Origin: Botryllus schlosseri
Taxonomy: Eukaryota
Length of the DNA: 64,000 nt
Assembly (NCBI GenBank): GCA_051294905.1
Contig: CM119382.1
Span: 12,276,001-12,340,000, forward strand
Reading direction: 5' to 3'
The notes beneath the pieces were generated by a model that did not search any database, was not told the origin of the DNA, and saw only the letters and a list, made by a program, of their open reading frames with translations. Shown here in pieces: positions 43,388 through 57,646 of the stretch. A program made the position numbers and the translations under genes. How positions within the stretch are numbered: position 1 is the first letter of the stretch; each line of letters starts with the position of its first letter.

Positions 43388-46300
43388 ATGGCCCAACTGA
43401 GTATAAATCCTCATGGTCACGTGGTACGGGACGGTCGGACATTGGCTGAGATTATCGCTGATGAAGAGTACCTTGAACCTGATGAACGGCCAGTTGAAAC
43501 CAAGGAAGAAAAGAAGGAAGAAAAGAAAATGAAATTTTTAAGCTTTGAACTGGACATGACTTATCCAAGGACACTACGCGGATTCGTACGGACTATTCAA
43601 ATAGTAAGTGTATCTCTGAAAAGGAGAATCAATCCCGACTGAATGTTGTGATGAAATCTGAGGGTGATAGTGAATTTTCTGCGTTAACCTTAGCGCCAGT
43701 GTACTTACTGGATGCAAAGCCAATCCAATATATCCACATATAGCATCTCCTAGCGCTGCATTTAAAACAAACGGTGTTTTAAAACACTTTGTTTAAAACA
43801 TGCCTTAAAAGAATTGCTTTTTTTAAAACGTTATATAATTATGCCATTATTGTGCAAAAACTTTCGAAAGACGTGTAGTATGCGCCCACGGAGGATTTGC
43901 ATCAAATAAACTCGACGTATACGATATGGAGCGGCAGGAACGGTCAAAATTGTCGTTGGTTCGACAGTTATAGCAAGTGATGAATATGACCGCCTACCGT
44001 AAAAATGCTGCATAACGATGTAGACCTTGCTAAAAATGTTTTTGGTCTGTTTGTGAAAGTGGTCGAAAGCCCTTTTCGTCGAAGAATTAAAGATTCGTGA
44101 CGTTATGACTAGAAAAGAAGAAGCACAAACAAAAAACAACAACAATAAAAACATGTTTTAAACAAGGGTTATGTTTCAAACATTTTTGTTTTAAATTGAT
44201 TTTTGTTTTAAATGCAACCCCAGATTCCCCCATATACTACTAAGTCAACAGACACAAAGTTCAGAATATTGACATCTGTGGTCTAGGTGCATTTAAGTTA
44301 TCACACGTTGTCTATGTGTGAAATATACGCCGTACTGTACATCGAACTTTCGAAATAGCAATGCCCTGTCAATGGTGAAATGGTAGTAGGCCTACCCCAT
44401 TTCGGAAAACACCGAACACCGAATAAACGAGGCCTCGTAAAATTAGACGACACAATGACACTAACCTCCGTTTACACTAAAAACTTCTATAACTTCTATT
44501 TTTGGACGCTATATATCTGGTCGATTCCGTATGCTTAATGGCATCCACGAAAGTCAATGCTCTGAGCAAGGTATTGTAACCACAAAAATACATATCAAAC
44601 ATGGGAATTGTTATGATATAGCCATGGCAGTTGATGTATCAATAGATCCACAGATGCGCAATTATGCATACGCCTCTCCTATAGGTAAAAAGTGTTTCGG
44701 TTTATTCATCACCAATCACACCTAATGCGACGTGACATATGCATCATCATGACGAGTTTATGTTTTCGATCCCTGCAATAATGTCTTGTTTTGTTTTTCA
44801 GCTGTTGCTGCTTGTTTCGTTTGTGTGCTTAGTCCTTACAAACTGGGGAGACGCCCAAGGAGCTTACACTTTCTACTGCATAGTGCTGGTCGTTGCTGCT
44901 ATCATTAGCGGGTTTCTTTTCTTTTCAATCATCGCCGGAAGCAGAAGCGGCAAAGTTTGTGGTAGGTTTACCGAACTACATTTCGGGTTACCATAGGCCC
45001 TACTTTAGAAGGATCTGTCCTCCCTTTTACCGGAAATGGAAAATGTCCTCCGAGGACGCCCAAATGTCCTCCTTGTTGACAATTCGTCCTCATTTACAGC
45101 TTTTACAGCTAGGCTAATGGACAGGGTCAACTGAAAATCGGCGCAAATGACGCGAAGTAGGTAATGCGGTCGCTCGAGTGGGTCATTTGAGAGTCGAATC
45201 AGAGTAATGGCCTTTTTTAGTCAACACAACAAGATTACCAGTACATATTTCAAAATTAGCTGTTTTCAATTTCGGTAAACTAACCTTTATGACTTTTAAA
45301 AAGTGTCATCATTTCCGGATTCCAAAATATCCTAACTACATTCGAATTCAATGTTCTAATCACGTCCACACCGCGCGCTGGTTTCCAATGCAATTCCATA
45401 CAAAACTGAATAAATGTAGATGTCAAAATTTCAAAGCAAAGCTTCTGGTAAGATGGTTCACACTGCGAGGATTATGAGATATTCATGTGATCACTCATGG
45501 TGTAATCTCTCAGAGTCAATACCAAACAATGATCATGCCGAAGCTCCGGAAACCAGAGCATAATGCAACTTGATCAGATGCACTTTCATTTGTTCGTCTT
45601 TTAGATGAGAGAGAGAGAGAGAGAGAGAGAGATTGAGAGAGAGAGGGGGTATTCGTTTTCGCCTGCACCATCGATATGCTTTTGACGATGGGGATGCGAT
45701 ACGACTGTAAGGTCATCTATAGTCAGCACCCCCGTTTTTTCTCCCCCATGCTATCCGTGGATGCTGAGCGCCTAGCAGTATATCTGCGGATATCAGTTTG
45801 AAAAGTCTTTGGTCTCACCCGACCGGGGTTCGAACCCACAACCTACTGATCAAGAAGCCGGACGCATCACCATAAAACTATCTCGCTCGGTAGATGCATA
45901 GGTTATATTCAATCCACGCGTGATTGAGTGAAATAGAATAACATTATCTTAACAAATGTTACATTTCCATTCTAATCGGATTCTGTTTATCACCACCGGT
46001 GATTATCCGCTGTTTGATATTTTGATGAAATCTGTTACAAGGCATGATCCTGTACGCAACAGGCAATCGAGTAGGGTGAACACTGAAATTAGATGTCTGA
46101 TACAAACAAACCTATACTTTTTCAACGCCTCTAATTTAACAAATGTCACCTACATCACTCTTTTGGGATTTATCATGAAAACGCACCAGTTATTCAAAGC
46201 TCAGTGCACATGTTGGGTGTCCCATACCAATTTTAATTAACAGCCTATCCGTTCTAATCATAAGCGTCCAAATTAAACAATATTAGTAAATGATCGCTGA

Positions 46301-49300
46301 CCGTCTGCGATCCACACCTTCTCTTTTTGTAAGGGTTGATGCGAATTCATAACGTTGCGTGACATCGAATGGTCAATTGGTGAGACAACGTAGGCTACAG
46401 TGCAACAAGACAGCGATTGCTCAGTCACAGAACTATATAATCAGCTAGGACATGGTGAAACGCGATGTCGTATAAAGCGTGTGAAGTTCGTTCGCATTCT
46501 CTACCATGCGTCATTAGCCACCGCAAACTGAAAACATCAATCTCAAAGCGTCATATTATGGTCGCATGTGATATGGTGAGCACTATAGCCAGGGATGAAT
46601 TGGCTTTGGTTTTGTGCTGGTACTTTTACATGATACACAACGCTGCAAGTAAATCGGACTTGACATGTAAATATATATAACTCTGCTAATCTTTTTTAAA
46701 AGTATTTCACTGACAAACCCATTCAATGACTTTTGGAACGCGACTCTTACTATCCCTAGACTATACATATGCAACACATGTCTCGAACATTAGCTGACCC
46801 TATATTTGTATGTGTATGTGTATGTCCTACCCTCTATCGCCTGTGCGGCGATGCGGACCTTAAATAATCCCCGAATACCTAATTGGGATTTTAAGGTCGA
46901 CTTGGATTATCCTGAATCCATCAAGCCATTTGTGTAGTGTTAGCGTATCTACACCCACAACTCCACTATCACATATCAGTGTTGGGGATGTATAAGTATG
47001 GTACGTCGGCGGTAGCAGTTTCAAATCATCCTCACTGCATTATTGCGACTGATTGCACCTCATTACTAACTACACCTCAAATGCATTGGGTAATTCGCAC
47101 TAACTAAAAGAATTCGTGTATGTCGCCTAATTCCACCATGGCGAATGGTGTACATCAGGTAATCGGCATTTTCCGGTACAAAATATTGCTTTCACACCAT
47201 TTCGATGAGTGAAAACGCCTCAAATATACACCAGTTCTCATGTATATATAAGTATATCTCAGGTGTAGACTGGGAATTGATATCTTGTATCACCCCGAGA
47301 AGGCGAAAATGATGTCAGACATAAACAGAACCCACTATACACTCCAGGAATATATATGCATAGGAATTGGTGCATGTGACTCGTTTCACCCATTGGAATG
47401 ACTGTGAAAGAACAAAAATTATACTTTAGAGGAAATCTTATATATGTATAGGCTGCCTATTTTCTATTCATGTATAATATACATTGTATATGTTTACAGT
47501 GTGGGGGGATACAACTTTCACAATGTAGTTTGTACTTGGAATTGGAAAACAATAGGCTTATCATTTGAACGATTGAACGATTTGAACGAAATTGGTTATT
47601 CGGATTTGCATTCCCCATGATCACCCTCATATTGTATTTTAGGATTGACCTGGGTAAAGGTCGAACTTTTATACTTTTTCCTCTTCGGATTTCTTGTATT
47701 CATCGGGGCTTGTCTCGCCGCGAGTAACAACGCCACTGGAAATCCAGCGCTAAATGCAGGAGCGGTGAGATGAAGTTTGAATACTTTTTTTAGGATTACA
47801 TAAACTGTCGCTCAATGACTAATGGGCTTAGCATTCAGCGCTGCGTCAGAAAATTTATGGCTATTCAACTTTCAATTATAGGCATTCGGCTTTATTGCGT
47901 GCATCACATTCGCTCTCTACATATTCTGGACCTGGAAAGATTACAAAAACCCGCCGGCAGAGGACGAAAAGGATGACGAGAACAACGAAGAGAAGAAGAA
48001 CGATGATGACCCGGAAAAGGGTCTTCAGAGTCCTCCCCACGATAACGGCAATGTGGAGCCAAGGACGGAAAGTCAACGCCGAAAAAATAGCCTAATTGAC
48101 CCCCCGGAAAACGAAAACGGCGACTTAAGAATTGATCCTCCCATGAATCGTAGCGACAATTTTCGGTAAGTTGTAAAACTATCCATCAATTCGTAAATGA
48201 CAACGGATGTAGCGTCGCAAATTCTTCGCGGTGGAGGGCGATAACATCAGCCCGATTCGGTTTTCGGAAAAACTGGTTTCCAACGCACCGTCGACACCGC
48301 GTTTTTCGCTCGCGGCACAGATTAGCTCACTGTACGCCGGCCTGGTAATTACAAGTTTTCGCTTTGCGAGTGAAAATACTGCCGAAAAACAGACCTGAGA
48401 AGAGTAACATGAAGTGGAAATCGTGATACTTTGGTCAGAAACGCGGCTTTGATGTCGTTAATTGATATCACCTGAATTTGCATCCGAAACCCGAACACTT
48501 ATTTACTACTTACATGTTCGATTTCGGTCAGCCACAATTGTCGGACTCCAAGAGACCTATGCGTTGCGGAGTAGCTTCACGTTCACACTTATAATATTAT
48601 AGGTAGTTTATTCAGAGCTGGTCAGGAACGAAGTACTCTTATAGTTCCTTCACTGCCTACTTAAGTGGTTACGTTTTTAGACTACTCATATTTATACTAG
48701 AACATTTTTTGGTTGTTTTTCACACTTGTGATACTGGAAATTTAGTAAGTAGTTTTGGAATTCCTTTGCCTAACTGTTGTGAGTGCAAATGTCACACTAT
48801 AGCACACCTATAGCATCACGGTAACTCACTATATTTAATAAAATGTAGTTATTTGTACTGCCATCATCTTGCAAATTCGCAAGTTTTCCATCGATTTACT
48901 GCTGAAAGTATGCAACCCATCAATAAAACCTACTTTCCGAACTACATAGTTGAGAACTTTTGACGTTTCTTCGAAATTGCTACTTCTATTTTTAATTCGG
49001 TACAAATTTACGGAGTTGCTTCTACTTCTAATTCAGTCGCAACGGTGACTACTTTGATCGCTTCTGAGTTAATGGTAATATTTCAGTATCCTTCAGGCAT
49101 TGTCGTCATATTCCTTAAAAATAAGGACATGAATTCAATCACGTTTGTTCTTACCATACTATGATCTGAAATTATTACGCAGAAGCCCGTTCACATCTGT
49201 CACTTTTAATTGCATCTGTTTACGTTATTACTGATTTATGGCTACCCGCGGTAACCACTCATCTTTACTGCAGATCAAGTCAAAGCCGTCGGCTCATTGA

Positions 49301-52300
49301 CAACCCGAGAAGGTCATTAGACGGACAGCTCCCTATATTATCTCGAGATGGAATGATTGATCCGAAAAGGAAAAGCGATCAATTCTATCGACGACACCGA
49401 AGGTATAGCTATAGAATATGTGAGTTATAGGTTAATTTAACCCGCTGCAGCAACCGGGATGGACCAGTGCGTTTTGAACTTGGACTCAAGCTTAAACAGA
49501 GGATCACCAAAAGTAAACGCACATTTGTGGCGAGAGAAAAGATCTTGGGTTTGAGCAAGATCTCGTCGAACCTCTTTCACAAATATATTATGACCCGAAA
49601 CATACCGTACAGTAAGTTACAGATAGACAGACGCATAGACAGTTACAGATAGTATGGTCAGCATAGAGTTGGACTTGTTTGCATAGTTTCTAATGTAATG
49701 TGGGATAGGGCACAACCCGGATACAATGTTATAGACAAGCGGTTTAAGAAGAATCATACATAGTCTTGCCAGAATTATATACCATATCCATCCGTTCTCG
49801 CTGCATCATATCTATCGATATGTTGACCGTTTCGGGGTAAAACATGTTACGTTACAGGTTTACAAATGCATGGGAAATTGAAGGCCCAACCCTTTGTGGA
49901 CTAGCGTAACAAATTCGGTACATACCGAATTACATCATTTTGTGCTGACTTCACGCATACTTGACACGGCCACGACGGCCGTCGTAGAAAGTACACATTC
50001 CGAACATCCCTTTGGCGCCTTTTAAAATAGAGTGTTTGGAGTGAAAGGTGGGTGTCCCGGACGTTGTTTGTTGCATTGGCATGTCTGAGTGAAGTCAGTG
50101 GACCCACGTTCTTTGTTGCTTCAAGGTCGAAGGATTTGGTGAGTATATTCGTTTATAAAAATATGTATAGGATTCTTTACACCATAAATCACATAGCCAG
50201 AAGTGTTTTGGATCAATAATGTGTTATTCTTCTTGGCAAAGTTGAAAATGGGGAGTGATGCGAATTTGCGTCATTAGCCCTTTGTTGGTCAATTCTGACA
50301 ACATTCCTACTACTGAAATATTTCCATATGGAATAGGTATTTACGTGAGAAAAGAGGGGAATAGATTCACCAACTTCACGAGTCAAGAAAGTGCCTTGAT
50401 ACATCACATAATGACAATAAATATGTAAACTAACTACTAGAATAGTGCGAATTAGTAACAAATATTGTCAATAATTTCAATCAGAAATTGCTGTTGCGGA
50501 AATGGATACCAGATGTGTTTATGGGAAAAAATCACTCATCAAGTGACGGTAAACTGGAAAGGCAGTAAAGATGGTGGCAGTGATTCTGACGACGAAGAAC
50601 GTTCTACTGCAGCAACTTCTGCTGCTATGTGATAAATGAGTTCGGATGAATCCTCTTCCACCGATGAATCTGATGAAGATTCCTCAATCGTGTTTTCAAA
50701 AGTAGGGAAAGGGAAAACACCGGGTCATATTGCATGTACACCGCATGAACCAAAACGAAAACCTATATGGAAAACAATTCTAGGTGAAAAGATCCCTGGC
50801 TACTATTTCCCTAATGGAAGGCAGAATTGCTCGACAGTGACTATACTGTTTCTTCTCCGCACGCATATTTCGAATATTTTGTTGTAGCGGAATTGCTGGA
50901 CTGGATTGTTTATGAGAGCAATTTATTTGCCGTTCAAACTAATCCAACGAAGGTAATGCAGATGACTGGAGACGGTATTGAAAAAGACTTGGGAAGTTGC
51001 ATGCATATGTCTATCGTGAAAATGCCAAGATCCTATTTGTAATGGGCAGGGTTGTAATGACTCGAGTCATGACTCGACTCGAGTCCGACTCGAGTCACGA
51101 TTTTCAGAGGACTCGACTTGACTCGAGTCATTTTTTCAAAATACAGAAATGACTAGACTCGACTCGAGTCAATCTGTGTATTGACTCGACTTGGACTCGA
51201 GTCATTGCGCATGACTCGCACCAAGTCATTGACTCGAGACTCAGACAGCCAAGACCGACATTTCATTGTAATTCCGAAGCAAACACACTATTGGGATTTC
51301 GTCTGTTTGTACTGGTACTTGAATATGAGACCAGAAACTGCTAAAAGTGAGGAAAATTGGTATATTATAAATGCGAAACATTCGATATCACCAAACAGAG
51401 TTATAAAAAGTGGGTTTACCAAGACTTTAACTGGAAACTGAGCAGTGTACACAATGACTTGGACTCGGACTCGAGTCATAATTCCATGACTCGGACTCGA
51501 CCCTCTGCTCGCTGACTTCGACTCGGACTTGACTCGGTGGTGAATTGAAATGACTCGACTTGACTCGAGTCCAAAGTATAAAAGTGAGATTGACTTGTGA
51601 CTCGGAGCCTTGTGACTTGGTTACAACCCTGGTAATGGGCCAATGATACTAGATATGATAAAGTTTCTGATATCATGTCCCGAGATCGATGGAAGCAGAT
51701 CAAATCTTTCTTGCTCATAGTTCATCTCGCATGTGATTTTTTGCAGTAGGATCAAACGTGCGATCAAACATACTGAGTGGCTGTCAATTCAGTAATGGCA
51801 CAGACTTCATGACAAGGAGAGTGATATTTGAAGTGAAGGAGGTTTCTCTGGACGGCGTTAGTATTTGGCAGTAAAGTGGTATGACAATCGCAGTGTGATA
51901 CTGGTCAGTACCTTTGTCAAAGCTAATCCTGTTAGTAAGATTGAGATTTATTGGTTGATCTTGCTGTCGTCAATAGTTAATTGCTGTACTGACGACTGTT
52001 TTTGTGCAATTTCCGAAACAGATGCAAAAATATCTGCTTGCACCAAATTATAAGCAGAATACCTGGTAAAGTATGGAAAATTAGTGACAGGGGAAAAAGA
52101 GGGAGGTCATCTCTCTGTATCCAGCAGGAGTATCATAAGAAAATGAAAAGAGGACCAACAAAGCCCACCCCAACGCGACCAAGTGGGTCACTCGCCTTCC
52201 ATGGACACCAGGCAGAGATGCAAGAGACATACCTATGAAGAACAACCTGTTACAAAATGTGTCAAATGTCATGTACATCTGTGCCTGAACAAAAACTATA

Positions 52301-55300
52301 ACTGTTTTGCTAATTTTGACCAATAATTTCAATGGACAAAATTGACCTGTTTTGTTTCGATTTTTGTCGCGAAAGCCTGATGTCGCAAATTTGCGACAAA
52401 CATTTAAAATAATAAATAATAAAAGAAAAATTTGAATTTTGTTGACCAATGTCTAAGTTGAGGCAAAACAATTAAAGTTACGCATAGAAATAATTTTTCC
52501 AACCATAGAGAATATATTCAGTCCACAAAGGGTTAAAACCATTGTAAGAGCAATCGAACGATATTGATCACGGGGATATGATGTAGAGATGATCGGTTAT
52601 GGCTTATGATATTTCTAATTAAAACGTATGAACCATAGATCTTCAGTTCACACATGATTCCATATCCAATTTCATATAACATTCAAATTCAAGTACATAT
52701 CCGGAATAATGACGAAAAGTCGTTCGTCCTAATTTGAAGTCATTCAAAATTTCGCTTTCAAATTCCATTATCCGGTATCATATGGGTCTAAATTAAATCC
52801 AAATTCGCCTACAATTGAATAATATGTTCATATTAAAATAAACCGGAATATTTTCAGTTGGTACAAAAATTAGAATTCAAATTTTCATGCCTGTCATGTC
52901 ATATCTGGTGATACGACTGTTGATAATACAAAGTTCTTTTGAATTCCATCTATTATAGTTGCTGACGATTACCCTTGGCGACCGTTCGACTACAATATTC
53001 GGGTTTATTTCAATATGAATATACCATTCACTTACATATCTAAGTTCTGTAGCTCCAAGAGTCTCTTCAAGTATATCCAAATGTGTGCCAACTGCCAAGT
53101 GCGTATTCCCAGTCGAGCGACGACGGTTTAGTACCTTTTGCGATACAACAATAGTGTCAAATACAGAATAACTTAATTTAGCCTTTTATAATTTTATAGC
53201 GGGTCGGACAAAGATTCAGCTTACAGCGAAGGCTCCATGAATGATCGGGACCGATCGCTGCCCACCAAGATTAGACGGACCGCCAGCATGCGAGATGCCA
53301 ACAGAGCAAGGCAATCAGTCAAAACGTCACGCCATCACGCTGGGGAGAGGAGGATGCACCATTCAGCCGACCGGTATGTTCGCCTCTAGAGTCTAGCCTA
53401 AGTCGGGTATAGTGGGCGAATTATAGCTGTCTCTCACAGTATCAAGTACCGGCATTTAATTCATATACAGGTGCATACAAGCACCAATGAGAGATGAATT
53501 TAAAAAGTTTGCCTGCACAAATCAAGAAACCGGCGAGTAATATGCAAACCCTGTACGATGTCAATGATGATGTACGATGTACGGTCAATATCTTGGGTCG
53601 CGATGATGGATACATTTCGCCAAAATTGCAATCGCGGGCAACTGTAGACATGAAGACGTTCCGGTTATATAGCAAAATGACGATTACAACAATGCCTTTT
53701 CTTATACCTACCCCTTTTATTGTGCGGATATGTGTTTTTTGCGAGTTTGTTAGCATCTGTACATTGGATTTGACCTACAGTTGTGTTGTCCCCGCTGCAT
53801 TGTACGCAGAGATAGTCACCAGTCAGTGACGATCGACTATTATTTGGAGTATACCCGAGTCACGAGCCATCTACTTGCACTATTTACTCAAATGTTTATA
53901 TTTGAACCTATACTTCCTCTTCAATTACAGCAGTTTGTGATGCCAAACTAGCGTGAAGTCGGAAGTTACGCTTATATAAGGTTGCATCACTTTTTGAGTG
54001 AAATGATCACGCACCCCTGATATACGGGTGTGAATACACACTCATGACCCACGAAACCAGAACTGACCTCTGACTTATACCGAGGTATAAATCGAGTACA
54101 AGATTTTCATCCAAATTATATGTATGCATATAGGAAAGTAGCAAGACATGCACTGCACGTAGGTACGTGCGATTTATGACCGCGATATAATTCCGAGTTG
54201 GTTGCCTATACAATACAGTGGATAAAATTGCATCGATGCAGACACACAAAAACAAAGGAATAACTCTTCAGCACACACCAAATAAGTATATGTCAGACAT
54301 ATTGGCTTGAAATCAATGTTGTTTCAGGCGACCGAGACAGCTATCAGCCGCCGAATTAATGAATGATGAACACCGCCAACGCAAATCAGTTCCAAACTGG
54401 CTCAAAGCAGCACTTGATGATGACGAGCCAGACATACCGAGGATTTCCTCCACGATGCCTGCAGCGAGACGAAAAAACGAATTCCCGCTCCTACACACGT
54501 CCGACGAGGAGTCGGTAGCGTACCCATCCGTGTCGCAAACACTCGGGAATCAGAGGGAGCCGAAGTGGGGACACGGCGGTCGCGCCTACCGGGAAAATCA
54601 TCAACATATGCGCAGAGGGATAAACCACGGTCGACATAACGCTGCGTACGGGCAGCACGGAAGGGGTGGGAAGCGGCCGCACGCCCATGGACACAGGATG
54701 CTGCATAATCACGGAAAACGACATGGACATGGTCAAGGACAAAACAGGCAAGTCGAATCAACTATAACACATCACCACTGATTGCCAGGGTTGTGATGAC
54801 TCGAGTCATGACTCGACTTGAGTCCGACTCGAGTCACATTTTTCTGATGACTCGACTTGACTCGAGTTATTTTCTCAAAATACGGAAATGACTCGACTCG
54901 ACTCGAGTCAACCTGTGTATTGACTCGACTTGGACTCGAGTCATTGCGTATGACTCGAACCAAGTCATATGACTCGAGACTCAGACGGCCAAGACCGACA
55001 TTTCATTGTAATTTCGAAGCACATTAAAGTAACCACACTATTGGGATTTCGTCTATTGGTACTGATACTAGAAAATCCGACCAGAAACTGCCAAAAAGTG
55101 AGTAAAATTAGTATATGATCAATGCGAACCATTCGATGTCACCAAACAGAATTTAAAAAAGTGGATTTAACAAGACTTTGACTAGAAACTGAACAAGCAA
55201 CACAATGACTTGAACTCGAACTCGAGTCATAACACCATGACTCGAACTCGACCCTCTGCTCGCTGACTCGGACTCGGACTTGACTCGGTGGTGAATTGAA

Positions 55301-56453
55301 AATGACTCGACTTGACTGGAGTCAAAACCATAAAAGTGAAATTGACTTGTGACTATGAGCCTTTTGACTTGGTTACAACCCTGCTGATTTCATATTGAAT
55401 TTCACCATTTCGTTAAATCAAATTCGGAATTTCTATAAATATTCAAATTCAAATTGTAATTCATTTTCGAATTACGTACGTAGATCGCGACAATGTTGGA
55501 GTTACTTCAACAATTCCAGCTCAGTTAGAAATATTTTGACTGTTTCGACATAATATTATTTTATTTCAACATACATGAGCAATTGATCATTTTACGCCAA
55601 GCCCTTAAGTTTAAAGCAGCATGCATTTCCACTGCGTGATAGCATGGTCTACTTTTGCTCCAGGCTTTTGCAAGGCACGGTCCTATATGCAGCTCGGGTG
55701 ATTCATCGTCGCTAACTTCGAGTCATTTCGATTCACTCCAAATTTTGACTCGAGACAATGAGTGAAACTACGAAGTTCGGGTTATCGACCCGTGGTATAG
55801 AGGCTTAGCCACACCGAATCAGTCTAACTTGGTGCTGTGCATGGACAGCGGTTATTATGTAAATTGTTGAGAATGCTCTACTGAGTATCATATGAGAGTA
55901 TAATTCAATGTAAGCGGTGTTTATCGACTGAATTGCCAAATGACACCTATAACGACAGGCTATTTCGACCGCGGTCAGGCTGGACTCCGTAACCTATTTC
56001 TTTCATAGATGCCGAACGATCGCCACAATATTCTTACTCTGAACACAGCCGTAATCGACTTGACTTTCAGGGGGCATCACCGTCGAGGGGACCGCCAAGG
56101 TCGAATGGGACCAGGGCACCAGCGGACGAGACAGCATCCTTCTCATGGTCGCGTGCGTCCACAAGACGACGCCTTCCTGCGCAAGATGATGGAAAACGAC
56201 CAGTTAGTAGATCGCAAAGCGCCAAACACCAGACCAGGGGTGTGTATGTCGAGTTGTGCTCCTGCCAGTAATTAATATCACTCAAGTTCAGTTTCCTTGA
56301 TTTAAGGAGCAACGGGCCCCGAGGCAGAGGCTGCACGAGACACCGTCCTCTCTACATTTTCCCGAAAGATCGCGTTGGGATGATCACGAGATGGAGATGC
56401 CTGAGCGCGGTGTCACAAAAGCCATGATAGAGAATTATTTAGAATCGGCGTGA
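43388..56453 (+). CDS. MARVEL-domain (CMTM/plasmolipin-like) 4-TM protein with a long His/Arg-rich C-terminal tail, ~606 aa; CDS = join(43388..43603,44802..44961,47643..47764,47882..48165,49274..49402,53200..53373,54328..54747,56071..56239,56307..56453)
   Basis: YPRTLRGFVRTIQILLLLVSFVC / W..VEL / AGAAFGFIA resemble MARVEL motifs across four hydrophobic segments. Nine exons have consistent phases 0,1,0,2,2,2,2,0 and total 1821 nt with no internal stop; one GC donor at 54748; AATAAA at ~56552. Exons 1-4 are more secure than the linkage of the tail exons. Confidence 0.78.
43751..44222. mobile_element. hAT MITE family Z, older copy (MARVEL intron 1)
   Basis: Colinear with 35778-36305; ends TAGCGCTGCATTT / AAATGCAACCCCA; TSD eroded. 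Confidence 0.75.
44983..45334. mobile_element. hAT MITE family Y, 21 bp downstream of the MARVEL exon 2 donor
   Basis: TCGGGTTACCATA left end, truncated right end, perfect TSD ACTACATT (44975-44982, 45335-45342). Confidence 0.8.
45607..45648. repeat. (GA)n microsatellite
   Basis: Direct reading of the sequence. Confidence 0.9.
45722..45890 (-). mobile_element. tRNA-derived SINE family 2
   Basis: Minus strand: tRNA-like head with B box GGTTCGAACCC, followed by ...ACCAAAGACTTTTCAAA...GGCGCTCAGCAT. Confidence 0.6.
47189..47410. mobile_element. Small MITE-like inverted-repeat element
   Basis: CTTTCACA...GTGAAA arms; the right arm matches ~19553-19598 in reverse complement. Confidence 0.5.
48613..49066. 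mobile_element. Tol2-like AAGTA MITE, reverse orientation (MARVEL intron 4)
   Basis: CAGAGCTGGTC left end; right end reverse complement CAGAAGCGATCAAAGTAGTCAC as at 6040; flanks AGTTTATT / AGTTAATG. Confidence 0.6.
49890..52532 (+). mobile_element. Decayed piggyBac transposon (transposase pseudogene) in MARVEL intron 5
   Basis: 13-bp TIR CCCTTTGTGGACT / AGTCCACAAAGGG, TTAA on the right (CCAA on the left). Remnants include PHAYFEYFVVAELLDWIVYESNLFA, DIMSRDRWKQIK, KWYDNRSVILVSTF and C-terminal KCVKCHVHLCLNKNYNCF; stops, frameshifts and internal deletion. Confidence 0.9.
51047..51631 (-). mobile_element. GACTCGAGTC-rich hAT MITE, copy 3, inserted in the piggyBac ORF
   Basis: Perfect TSD GTAATGGG (51039-51046, 51632-51639). 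Confidence 0.92.
54786..55383 (-). mobile_element. GACTCGAGTC-rich hAT MITE, copy 4 (MARVEL GC-AG intron)
   Basis: CAGGGTTGT / ACAACCCTG ends; TSD CTGATTGC / CTGATTTC. Confidence 0.9.
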
Positions 56454-57646
56454 TAGCCCCGGCGTAATCCTATTTTTGTTTATTTGACTGTTATATATAT
56501 ATTCCAATGTCGTTTTTTTGGTGTCAATGTTACCTTGCGGACTCCTGTTTCAATAAACACCATCGCATAATAACGCTTTTAAAATATGGTTGTATGATGC
56601 GGTGGTATTTTTGGTTACTCAGTGTTTTGTTACTTGAGCAATGCTAATGGTGAAAGGAGTCACTACGCACTTGTGCTACTCAAGTTGAGGTACAAGTGTA
56701 AATCAATTTTGGAGGTATAAGCTATATTACTGGGGGATATAGAACTTTAAAACGAATAGTATAAACCACATTTCTTGAATCCATGAGCTACTTCTTGGGT
56801 ACTGATGAATGCGAAAGTCTACCAGTTATACTTCCGCTTTTCATCCGTTGTATGTTGTATGTCTTCACTTAGACATTCACAGCACTGGGCAGGGCTTTCG
56901 CTCCTGACGAAGAGCATATAACGCTCACCGGGACTGACATCAGTGTCTGCAAGTTCAATTGGGTTGCCGCACCGCGCGTCGAATCGCCCATCTTTGCATC
57001 GTAGCTAGGGAATATTAACTACATTACTGTTAAGCATCCGCGGGTGCGAATAAGAGCAACGCCCCGATCGAAAACTGCGCTCGCATGTTCCTTAGGGTCG
57101 ACTGACCGATGTTCAACTGTCTTTCATGTGGAACACTTCTCGTTTCCAGCCTTTGAAGCTCTCATTTGAATATTTTCTACAGCGACCGCGGTTGGCTAAT
57201 TTGGTCCTGGCGAGTGACCTTGAACCGGCGGGCACCGTCTTGATGACACCTGCTATAAACTACAATATCGTTAGTGACTTTACCCTAACCCTAACACTTT
57301 TCCTCCAAAGAGCCTTTTTACGCTATATTTTGAATTGTCAATCTCGCCACACTTAGACGTCACAATTAGAGATTCATGACGTCATGGCTAAAAAACATGT
57401 TCTAAACATGTCTGTTTCAAATTGATTTTTGTTTTAAATGCAAACAGGCGTAGCTAATATAACTGACGCTTTTATGATCTGTCTGTGAAGCATCCGTGCA
57501 GAGTGCGTACAAAAGGCACGAAGTTATGGAGAAATAAAACAATCCCTTATAAGGTCATGTCCTATGGCATGTATAATATGACTTTTGAATCTAAAACGCA
57601 AGGATCTAGATTGAAATGACATGCGGTATAGATGTTGCCCCTACGA

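What the first reader, a model, noticed from the sequence alone, without database searches (positions are those of the whole stretch)
43388..56453. MARVEL 4-TM protein fused to a ~420-aa His/Arg/Gly-rich disordered tail
Seen: nine phase-compatible exons give a ~606-aa protein, with a MARVEL-like domain in about the first 185 aa. After it come an acidic segment, repeated IDP/IDNP motifs and a His/Arg/Gly-rich block (HQHMRRGINHGRHNAAYGQHGRGGKRPHAHGHRMLHNHGKRHGHG). Known: CMTM/MAL/plasmolipin MARVEL proteins are usually ~150-230 aa with short tails, and long-tailed members (occludin/tricellulin) end in an ELL domain that is not recognisable here. Inference: a lineage-specific membrane or vesicle protein whose tail could bind metal or polyanions, or drive condensates. 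This is the most unusual coding architecture in the window.
Basis: partly seen in the sequence, partly recalled or inferred. Interest (0 to 1): 0.72.

Follow-up and report, generated by a model that had tools for sequence, protein, structure and literature searches.

The report
Ascidian MARVEL protein with long tail
This is a real, expressed sea-squirt gene for a four-pass MARVEL membrane protein with a 420-residue, mostly disordered tail; the tail's motifs are conserved across ascidians, and the protein's function is still unknown.

Summary
Nine phase-compatible exons (43388-56453, + strand) give a 606-aa protein with four hydrophobic helices in aa 62-185 and a 420-aa hydrophilic tail. Transcript contigs from three independent studies of the same species join exons 3-4-5-6 at exactly the predicted GT..AG sites with no mismatches. 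Raw RNA-seq reads cross the critical 48165/49274 junction. No run covers the intron after the TAA at 48167.

The model aligns end to end with a cDNA contig of a related species and with annotated "uncharacterized" proteins of Styela clava, Clavelina lepadiformis and Ciona intestinalis.

The N-terminal domain is a divergent MARVEL/CMTM-like domain. Pfam scores it below the curated cut-off but over the full profile. Fold search ranks CMTM7/4/8 first. hhalign gives 91% probability to a canonical MARVEL protein of the same genome.

The tail is not just low complexity. It carries islands identical in all five ascidian sequences and an 85-aa block that is 63% His/Arg/Gly/Lys. Non-synonymous change is 3-8 times rarer than synonymous change. 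No relative of the tail was found outside ascidians, and there is no occludin-type ELL domain.

Function is inferred only: probably a trafficking or scaffold tetraspan. I rate it a new variant of a known kind, of moderate interest.

The parts
43388..43603 (+). Exon 1 (aa 1-72). Holds the start codon in an AAAG-ATG-G context, a conserved N-terminal cytoplasmic segment with a Glu/Lys-rich stretch, and the start of the MARVEL domain and TM1.
   Evidence: Blastn of cDNA contig L002 ends at 43603. The N-terminus aligns with Styela, Clavelina and Ciona proteins.
44802..44961 (+). Exon 2 (aa 73-125): rest of TM1, a short outer loop and TM2.
   Evidence: The own-genome search matches this exon at E 9.6e-22.
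47643..47764 (+). Exon 3 (aa 126-166): TM3 and the second outer loop, which carries an NAT sequon.
   Evidence: Joint 47764/47882 is present in contigs of X1, X2 and X5.
47882..48165 (+). Exon 4 (aa 167-260): TM4, an acidic Asp/Glu/Lys/Asn stretch and two IDPP motifs. Its donor lies just before the in-frame TAA at 48167.
   Evidence: Joint 48165/49274 is present in three contig runs and in five raw RNA reads. Depth is zero at 48200-49199.
49274..49402 (+). Exon 5 (aa 261-303): IDNP and IDP motifs. This is the least conserved exon.
   Evidence: It aligns at protein level but blastn does not find it across species.
53200..53373 (+). Exon 6 (aa 304-361): conserved islands SGSDKDSAYSEGS and PTKIRRTAS.
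   Evidence: Joint 49402/53200 is seen.
54328..54747 (+). Exon 7 (aa 362-501): the KSVPNWLKAAL helix, the EFPLL-SDEES-YPSV cluster and the first half of the His/Arg/Gly block. It ends in a GC donor.
   Evidence: Relatives were found with this exon alone. It is single copy in the genome. L002 blocks meet at 54748/56069.
56071..56239 (+). Exon 8 (aa 502-558): second half of the His/Arg/Gly block and the FLRKMMENDQLV helix.
   Evidence: AlphaFold2 predicts a helix at the matching place in the relative.
56307..56453 (+). Exon 9 (aa 559-606 plus TGA): the conserved HFPERSRWDD island and a C-terminal helix.
56553..56558 (+). AATAAA, the likely polyadenylation signal, about 100 nt after the stop codon.
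   Evidence: Sequence read. The X5 contig has 857 nt beyond exon 6, which equals exons 7-9 (736 nt) plus about 121 nt of 3' UTR.

Best explanation
Shown: the region is one single-copy, expressed gene of an ascidian (sea squirt). It encodes a 606-aa tetraspan membrane protein. Residues 56-186 form a divergent MARVEL domain of the CMTM type. The family is present in all three ascidian orders sampled and has been kept under purifying selection along its whole length.

Inferred from the positive-inside rule and from the known topology of MARVEL proteins: both termini, and therefore the 420-aa tail, face the cytoplasm.

Inferred, not tested: the tail is a mostly disordered platform of short linear motifs that couples MARVEL-type membrane microdomains or vesicles to cytoplasmic machinery. 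The invariant cluster ExxLL + SDEES + YxxV looks like adaptor-dependent sorting signals with a phosphorylatable acidic patch. I-R-R-T-A-S and the Ser-rich SxSxKDSAYSEG look like kinase sites. Three short helices (WLKAAL, FLRKMMEND and the C-terminus) look like docking sites. The 85-aa His/Arg/Gly block, with conserved RGxKRxHxHGxR positions, would add binding of metal ions or anionic partners, or a response to pH.

My odds: one real gene and transcript 0.97; ascidian-restricted constrained family 0.85; trafficking or scaffold role through tail motifs 0.35.
For: Gene model: phases and splice sites are consistent.

Contigs of X1, X2 and X5 (three studies) join exons 3-6 with no mismatches. Raw RNA reads of X23 cross two junctions. 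There is no intron depth after 48165. Contigs run 842-857 nt beyond exon 6, which fits exons 7-9 plus UTR. The share of indexed words in the likely RNA runs (0.14-0.24) fits the 0.16-0.18 expected if all of exons 3-9 are present.

Cross-species support: an intronless contig, L002, encodes a 608-aa protein 71.5% identical to the model, and its blocks end at the predicted exon borders. Styela clava (615 aa), Clavelina lepadiformis (611 aa), Ciona intestinalis (594 aa) and a Ciona savignyi fragment share the architecture.

MARVEL domain: Pfam PF01284 covers positions 1-132 of 135 at E 1.8e-6 to 3e-4. The ten best atlas hits with a family all share a family or clan with the top MARVEL hit. The top Foldseek hits are CMTM7, CMTM4, CMTM8, PLP2, CKLF, CMTM3 and plasmolipin. 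hhalign gives 91% probability to a Pfam-passing MARVEL ORF of the same genome.

Constraint: pN is 0.10-0.25 against a saturated pS of about 0.8 in every segment, including the His/Arg/Gly block.

Motifs and disorder: invariant islands are listed. AlphaFold2 gives pLDDT below 50 for most of the tail, with short helices only at the conserved islands.

Copy number: the gene is single copy.
Against: The MARVEL score is below Pfam's curated cut-off (best 28.5 bits against 32.8). Both structure models are of low confidence (pLDDT 42 and 54), so the fold matches are soft.

The window's own spliced protein could not be given to the family or structure tools. Close relatives stood in for it.

ExxLL is not a textbook [DE]xxxL[LI] or DxxLL signal. 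No localisation, interaction, phosphorylation or metal-binding data exist for any family member, and no paper mentions these genes.

Tissue of expression is unknown because the runs are coded.

The three 3' junctions were not seen directly in this species.
Confidence: 0.6

Rival explanations
1. The MARVEL gene ends at the TAA just after exon 4, and the tail exons belong to another transcript or are not expressed.
For: There is an in-frame TAA at 48167-48169, directly after the exon 4 donor. The tail has no Pfam domain.
Against: Single contigs in three studies, plus five raw RNA reads, cross 48165/49274. Depth is zero at 48200-49199 in all four runs. Relatives carry the same fusion in a cDNA contig and in three annotated proteomes.
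Confidence: 0.02
2. The gene is real, but the tail is drifting low-complexity filler with no function of its own. The protein acts as an ordinary CMTM-like MARVEL protein.
For: AlphaFold2 confidence is low over the tail. The tail has no domain hits and a biased composition. The acidic/IDP part and the His/Arg/Gly block change fastest (pN 0.22-0.25).
Against: About 50 tail positions are invariant from Stolidobranchia to Phlebobranchia. pN is far below pS in all tail segments. Tail length is held at 594-615 aa in total across four species.
Confidence: 0.05
3. It is the tunicate functional counterpart of the tight-junction MARVEL proteins (occludin, tricellulin), built independently with a different cytoplasmic tail.
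For: It is a MARVEL protein with a long cytoplasmic C-tail. The MARVEL + Occludin_ELL pair is listed as a vertebrate-stage domain combination (PMC11788884). From my own knowledge, tunicates have claudin-based tight junctions, which would leave room for an analogue.
Against: There is no ELL domain. The outer loops are only about 6-15 residues, where occludin has long loops (and my own knowledge of occludin). The nearest folds are CMTM7/4/8, and occludin is not in the listed hits. There are no localisation data.
Confidence: 0.08
4. Its main role is metal handling. The His-rich cytoplasmic block binds Zn, Ni, Fe or V at vesicle membranes, in animals known for accumulating metals.
For: The 85-aa block is 20% His and contains several HxH units (HQH, HAH, HNH, HGH). 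His richness is kept in all species, with Ciona highest at 9.8% of the tail. From my own knowledge, His-rich cytoplasmic loops of ZnT and ZIP transporters bind Zn.
Against: The MARVEL fold has no known transport activity. The best-conserved tail parts are not the His block. Nothing links the gene to blood cells or vanadocytes.
Confidence: 0.12

Closest known systems
CMTM family (CKLF-like MARVEL proteins; nearest are CMTM7, CMTM4 and CMTM8)
   Same: Both have a four-helix MARVEL domain with short loops. These proteins are the best fold matches, at 21-24% identity, TM 0.5-0.6 and probability 1.0. The chordate CMTM4 cluster ranks second by protein-language features.
   Different: CMTM proteins in the hit list are 150-234 aa with short tails. 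This protein adds about 420 conserved residues. Orthology to a particular CMTM was not resolved, because no tree could be built.
Occludin / MARVELD2 (tricellulin), the tight-junction MARVEL proteins
   Same: Both combine a MARVEL domain with a long cytoplasmic C-terminal tail that holds regulatory phosphosites.
   Different: There is no Occludin_ELL domain and the extracellular loops are short. The MARVEL + ELL pair is reported as arising in vertebrates (PMC11788884).
Uncharacterized ascidian proteins: LOC120342644 (Styela clava), LOC100185716 (Ciona intestinalis), LOC143460649 (Clavelina lepadiformis) and H2Z7F1 (Ciona savignyi)
   Same: These are true family members with the same length, domain order and tail motifs. 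Global identity to the window's protein is 57% (Styela) and 36% (Clavelina).
   Different: None in kind. They are orthologues that carry only automatic names, and no paper was found that mentions them.
Canonical short MARVEL protein of the same genome (G000:C8:7169486-7170097, minus strand)
   Same: It has a MARVEL domain, and hhalign gives 91% probability to this family's profile.
   Different: It is 203 aa, intronless, passes the Pfam cut-off at 42.5 bits and has a short tail.

Membership tests
MARVEL domain superfamily (Pfam PF01284) | Match to the PF01284 profile at or above the gathering score of 32.8 bits | tested here: inconclusive
   The relatives score 21.2-28.5 bits (E 1.8e-6 to 3e-4) over profile positions 1-132 of 135. 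That is below the curated cut-off. The window's spliced protein could not be submitted. It is 80% identical to P0005 over aa 1-185, which include this domain.
MARVEL domain superfamily (Pfam PF01284) | Four transmembrane helices with short loops and both termini cytoplasmic | tested here: met
   Four hydropathy peaks lie in aa 62-185. AlphaFold2 predicts four helices in the relative. Lys and Arg flank the cytoplasmic sides only, which I read from the sequence. The topology itself is inferred.
MARVEL domain superfamily (Pfam PF01284) | Profile or fold similarity to accepted members | tested here: met
   hhalign gives 91% probability (E 1e-6) to a Pfam-passing MARVEL ORF. The top nine Foldseek hits are all CMTM, CKLF or PLP2 proteins. 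The model's confidence is low (pLDDT 54).
CMTM subfamily | Orthology to a named CMTM clade in a phylogeny | not tested
I have only fold ranks and atlas ranks.
Tight-junction-associated MARVEL proteins (occludin / MARVELD2) | C-terminal Occludin_ELL coiled-coil domain (PF07303) | tested here: not met
   Three full-length relatives and the isolated tail give no hit at E<=1. Only short helices of 8-12 residues are predicted.
Tight-junction-associated MARVEL proteins (occludin / MARVELD2) | Long extracellular loops | tested here: not met
   The loops between TM1/2 and TM3/4 are about 6 and 12-15 residues.

The most novel reading that the evidence does not exclude
Ascidians evolved their own long-tailed MARVEL protein. 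Its conserved cytoplasmic motif array and His-rich switch would make it a lineage-specific organiser of a tunicate speciality. That could be junctional sealing without occludin, or metal- or pH-responsive vesicle traffic in blood or tunic-forming cells.
Probability: 0.12. Interest if true: 0.7.

Novelty: new variant of a known kind. Interest (0 to 1): 0.4.

Why it matters
MARVEL proteins organise membrane microdomains, vesicle traffic and, in vertebrates, tight junctions. Here the sister group of vertebrates has a single-copy family member with a long tail. That tail is disordered yet strongly conserved at a handful of short motifs, and it is unrelated to the occludin tail.

It is a clean case for asking how a small tetraspan gains new partners through a motif-bearing disordered extension. 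Orthologues exist in Ciona, where electroporation and CRISPR are routine, so the question can be tested directly.

On present evidence it remains one more uncharacterised lineage-specific protein, so the interest is moderate.

Tried and rejected
- Pfam on the nine exon peptides one by one found nothing useful, because the pieces are too short.
- The profile search of solved structures returned only chance matches to the ABCC2 membrane domain.
- The atlas feature search with the tail (aa 260-608 of P0005) gave no usable hit.
- The DNA of the contig encoding P0001 could not be fetched. A canonical GT donor at the same exon 7 border in that relative is therefore only a guess from its read-through peptide.
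- An alternative GT donor 3 nt downstream (54750/54751, GTCGAA) would keep the frame and add one residue. I set it aside because the GC site has the classic CAG|GCAAGT context and the L002 blocks meet at 54747/56071 without a 3-nt gap. The data cannot strictly exclude it.
- Paper searches by gene and protein identifiers found nothing.
- Earlier scan notes added nothing.
- dN/dS as a ratio could not be computed because synonymous sites are saturated. I report pN and pS instead.
Full report

That one is the exon 7 donor, CAG|GCAAGT, which is a consensus GC donor. I located the first four exons from the three-frame translation and the local sequence.

The nine exons are 43388-43603, 44802-44961, 47643-47764, 47882-48165, 49274-49402, 53200-53373, 54328-54747, 56071-56239 and 56307-56453. 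They sum to 1821 nt and translate without a stop into 606 residues plus TGA. A 19-residue hydropathy scan gives four peaks within aa 62-185. The tail (aa 186-606) is rich in Arg, Asp, Ser, Pro, Gly, Glu and His. The IDPP, IDPP, IDNP and IDP motifs lie at aa 238, 250, 269 and 289. The quoted His/Arg/Gly peptide lies inside an 85-aa block (aa 446-530) that is 63% Gly+Arg+His+Lys and 20% His.

**2. Is it one transcript?**

The run search returned 14 runs of the same organism that look like RNA. They hold 0.09-0.24 of the indexed words of 47643-56453. Exons 3-9 plus a short 3' UTR make up 0.16-0.18 of that stretch, so the best of these runs hold about what a full spliced message would contribute.

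I laid three such runs from three different studies, plus one raw-read bulk RNA-seq run, on 47600-53599. This was the only call allowed, and it was limited to 6000 letters. The results were:
- In each of X1, X2 and X5, a single contig runs exon 3, exon 4, exon 5 and (in X5) exon 6. The joints are GT..AG at 47764/47882, 48165/49274 and 49402/53200, and no letter differs from the window.
- The raw reads of X23 cross 48165/49274 five times, from five start points, and cross 49402/53200 four times.
- Depth is zero in all four runs at 48200-49199.
- The X5 contig continues 857 nt beyond exon 6, and an X2 contig continues 842 nt. Exons 7-9 are 736 nt, which leaves about 106-121 nt of 3' UTR.
- An AATAAA sits at 56553-56558, about 100 nt after the stop, in agreement with that UTR length.

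The three 3' joints were therefore not seen directly in this species.

**3. Relatives**

A full HMMER scan of 1.84 billion representative proteins with exon 7 alone found four proteins:
- Two are genomic exon-7-like ORFs of relatives (P0001 at 75% identity, and P0003).
- One is a 615-aa protein, P0002.
- One is a 295-aa fragment, P0004.

P0002 is "uncharacterized protein LOC120342644" of Styela clava. P0004 is Ciona savignyi H2Z7F1. Searching with P0002, and then with a family profile, added three more:
- P0005, a 608-aa protein on a 1968-nt Logan contig
- P0006, from Clavelina lepadiformis, 611 aa
- P0007, Ciona intestinalis LOC100185716, 594 aa

The window's genome is therefore an ascidian. 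It is 495 Mb, and the window is G000:C12:12276001-12340000.

The window's model aligns end to end with P0005, P0002 and P0006, with no gap at any exon border. Global identity is 71.5%, 57% and 36% respectively. The P0005 contig (L002) has no introns. Blastn maps it onto the window in eight blocks whose ends fall within 0-3 nt of the predicted borders at 43603, 44802, 47643, 47764, 47882, 53200, 54328, 54747 and 56071. At the other block ends (exon 2, 4, 6 and 8 donors, exon 9 acceptor) the blastn blocks stop 8-20 nt inside the predicted exon. Its blocks meet at the GC donor junction. Exon 5 is too diverged for blastn but aligns as protein.

The gene is single copy in this genome.

**4. Constraint**

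I compared codons between the window's coding sequence and that of L002. Synonymous sites are saturated, with pS between 0.77 and 0.91. Non-synonymous differences by segment are:

| Segment | pN |
|---|---|
| N-terminus | 0.10 |
| MARVEL domain | 0.10 |
| Exon 6 | 0.12 |
| Motif half of exon 7 | 0.10 |
| C-terminus | 0.20 |
| His/Arg/Gly block | 0.22 |
| Acidic/IDP part | 0.25 |

Every segment of the tail is therefore under purifying selection, though to different degrees.

Across five ascidian sequences the tail holds islands of identical residues:
- S-x-S-x-K-D-S-A-Y-S-E-G (aa 304-315)
- P-x-K-x-R-R-T-x-S (aa 325-333)
- K-S-x-P-x-W-L-x-A-A-L (aa 381-391)
- T-M-P ... E-F-P-L-L-x-x-S-D-E-E-S-x-x-Y-P-S-x-S (aa 404-431)
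- scattered R-G-x-K-R-x-H-x-H-G-x-R positions inside the His-rich block
- L-R-x-M-x-x-x-D-x-L-V (aa 538-548)
- H-F-P-E-x-S-R-W (aa 575-582)

The IDP repeats are conserved only among the closer relatives.

**5. What is the N-terminal domain?**

Pfam gives MARVEL (PF01284) as the best hit for P0002, P0005 and P0006. It covers profile positions 1-132 of 135 at 21-28.5 bits, with E-values from 1.8e-6 to 3e-4. These scores are below the 32.8-bit gathering score.

In the protein atlas, the top named clusters are MARVEL clusters, and the ten best hits with a family share a family or clan. They include a chordate CMTM4 cluster, and nematode clusters of 303 and 349 aa.

AlphaFold2 with only four or five sequences gives four long helices, but at low confidence (pLDDT 54 for the domain and 42 for the whole protein). 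Foldseek with the domain model ranks CMTM7, CMTM4, CMTM8, PLP2, CKLF, CMTM3 and plasmolipin first, at TM 0.5-0.6 and 16-24% identity. MAL and synaptogyrin come further down the list.

The same genome has an intronless 203-aa ORF on contig 8 that passes the Pfam MARVEL cut-off at 42.5 bits. The long-tailed family's profile aligns to it with 91% hhalign probability.

I accept the domain as a divergent MARVEL domain of the CMTM type. Orthology to a named CMTM is open.

**6. What is the tail?**

No Pfam family hits it at E<=1, including Occludin_ELL. The atlas gives nothing for it. The structure databank gives only chance membrane-domain hits.

AlphaFold2 predicts it as unstructured, with pLDDT below 50 for residues 187-380, 393-533 and 546-595 of the relative. 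The only helices are short and coincide with the conserved islands WLKAAL, FLRRMVEND and the C-terminus.

Lys and Arg flank TM1 on the N-terminal side, lie in the TM2-TM3 loop and follow TM4. The other two loops have no Lys or Arg, and one carries an NAT sequon. By the positive-inside rule, and by the known topology of MARVEL proteins, the tail should be cytoplasmic. This is inference.

**7. How it probably works**

MARVEL proteins act in membrane microdomains, vesicle cycling and membrane apposition. This is established knowledge of MAL, the CMTM proteins, synaptophysin and occludin.

The invariant EFPLL - SDEES - YPSV cluster resembles a dileucine-type signal, a phosphorylatable acidic cluster and a YxxPhi signal placed next to each other. 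Together they suggest adaptor-dependent sorting. I-R-R-T-A-S fits basophilic kinase sites. The His-rich, strongly basic block could bind metal ions or anionic lipids and nucleic acids, or could change charge near neutral pH.

I therefore favour a cycling tetraspan whose disordered tail recruits cytoplasmic partners, at odds of about 0.35. All of this is inferred from motif resemblance. The ExxLL spacing is not textbook, and nothing has been tested.

The rival explanations, with odds, are given in their own section. They are a separate tail transcript, a functionless tail, an occludin analogue and a metal-handling role.

**8. Comparison and novelty**

A recent survey lists the MARVEL + Occludin_ELL pair as a domain combination acquired in vertebrates (PMC11788884). 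A study of the CKLF/CMTM superfamily places the origin of most CMTM groups in the vertebrate stem, from pre-existing animal CMTM genes (PMC10792014). Neither paper mentions this family in the passages I read, and no paper holds its identifiers.

The protein already sits in public proteomes under automatic "uncharacterized" names, so the sequence is not new. What is new is the recognition of an ascidian-wide, constrained family of long-tailed MARVEL proteins. I rate it a new variant of a known kind with interest 0.4.

**9. Limits**

- The window's spliced protein could not be passed to the family, structure or database tools, so close relatives served as proxies.
- Both structure models are of low confidence.
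- The search tools that found relatives are word-limited or single-sequence, so distant tail relatives could have been missed.
- The coded runs give no information on tissue.

Noticed in passing
window 51042-51636 and 54781-55388: Two copies, 86-96% alike, of a roughly 600-bp element lie in introns 5 and 7 of this gene. The second copy starts 34 nt after the exon 7 GC donor. Contigs of the RNA-like runs pile up on the first copy to summed depths of thousands, with loose ends at 51047 and 51631, so it is a high-copy and probably transcribed repeat.
   Followed up: partly
window 50465-52300: Broken + strand ORFs in intron 5 look like a decayed piggyBac-type transposase. The hit is Pfam DDE_Tnp_1_7 at E 0.0016, below the cut-off, plus a WYDNRSV-like peptide. 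The remnant is interrupted by the 600-bp repeat.
   Followed up: partly
window 52800-53199: A second high-copy repeat lies directly upstream of the exon 6 acceptor, with contig depth up to about 4900 in X1.
   Followed up: no
G000:C8:7169486-7170097 (minus strand; L003:287-898): An intronless 203-aa ORF encodes a canonical short MARVEL protein (Pfam 42.5 bits, above the cut-off). Its N-terminus contains a PPPY motif. I used it as an in-genome comparator.
   Followed up: yes
window 47850: All four X23 raw reads that cover this point in the 117-nt intron 3 carry an extra AAG. That suggests unspliced or genomic reads with an indel difference from the assembly. X23 showed no reads across the exon 3/4 joint at the depth sampled.
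   Followed up: no
window 45607-45645: A (GA)n microsatellite of about 19.5 copies lies in intron 2.
   Followed up: no
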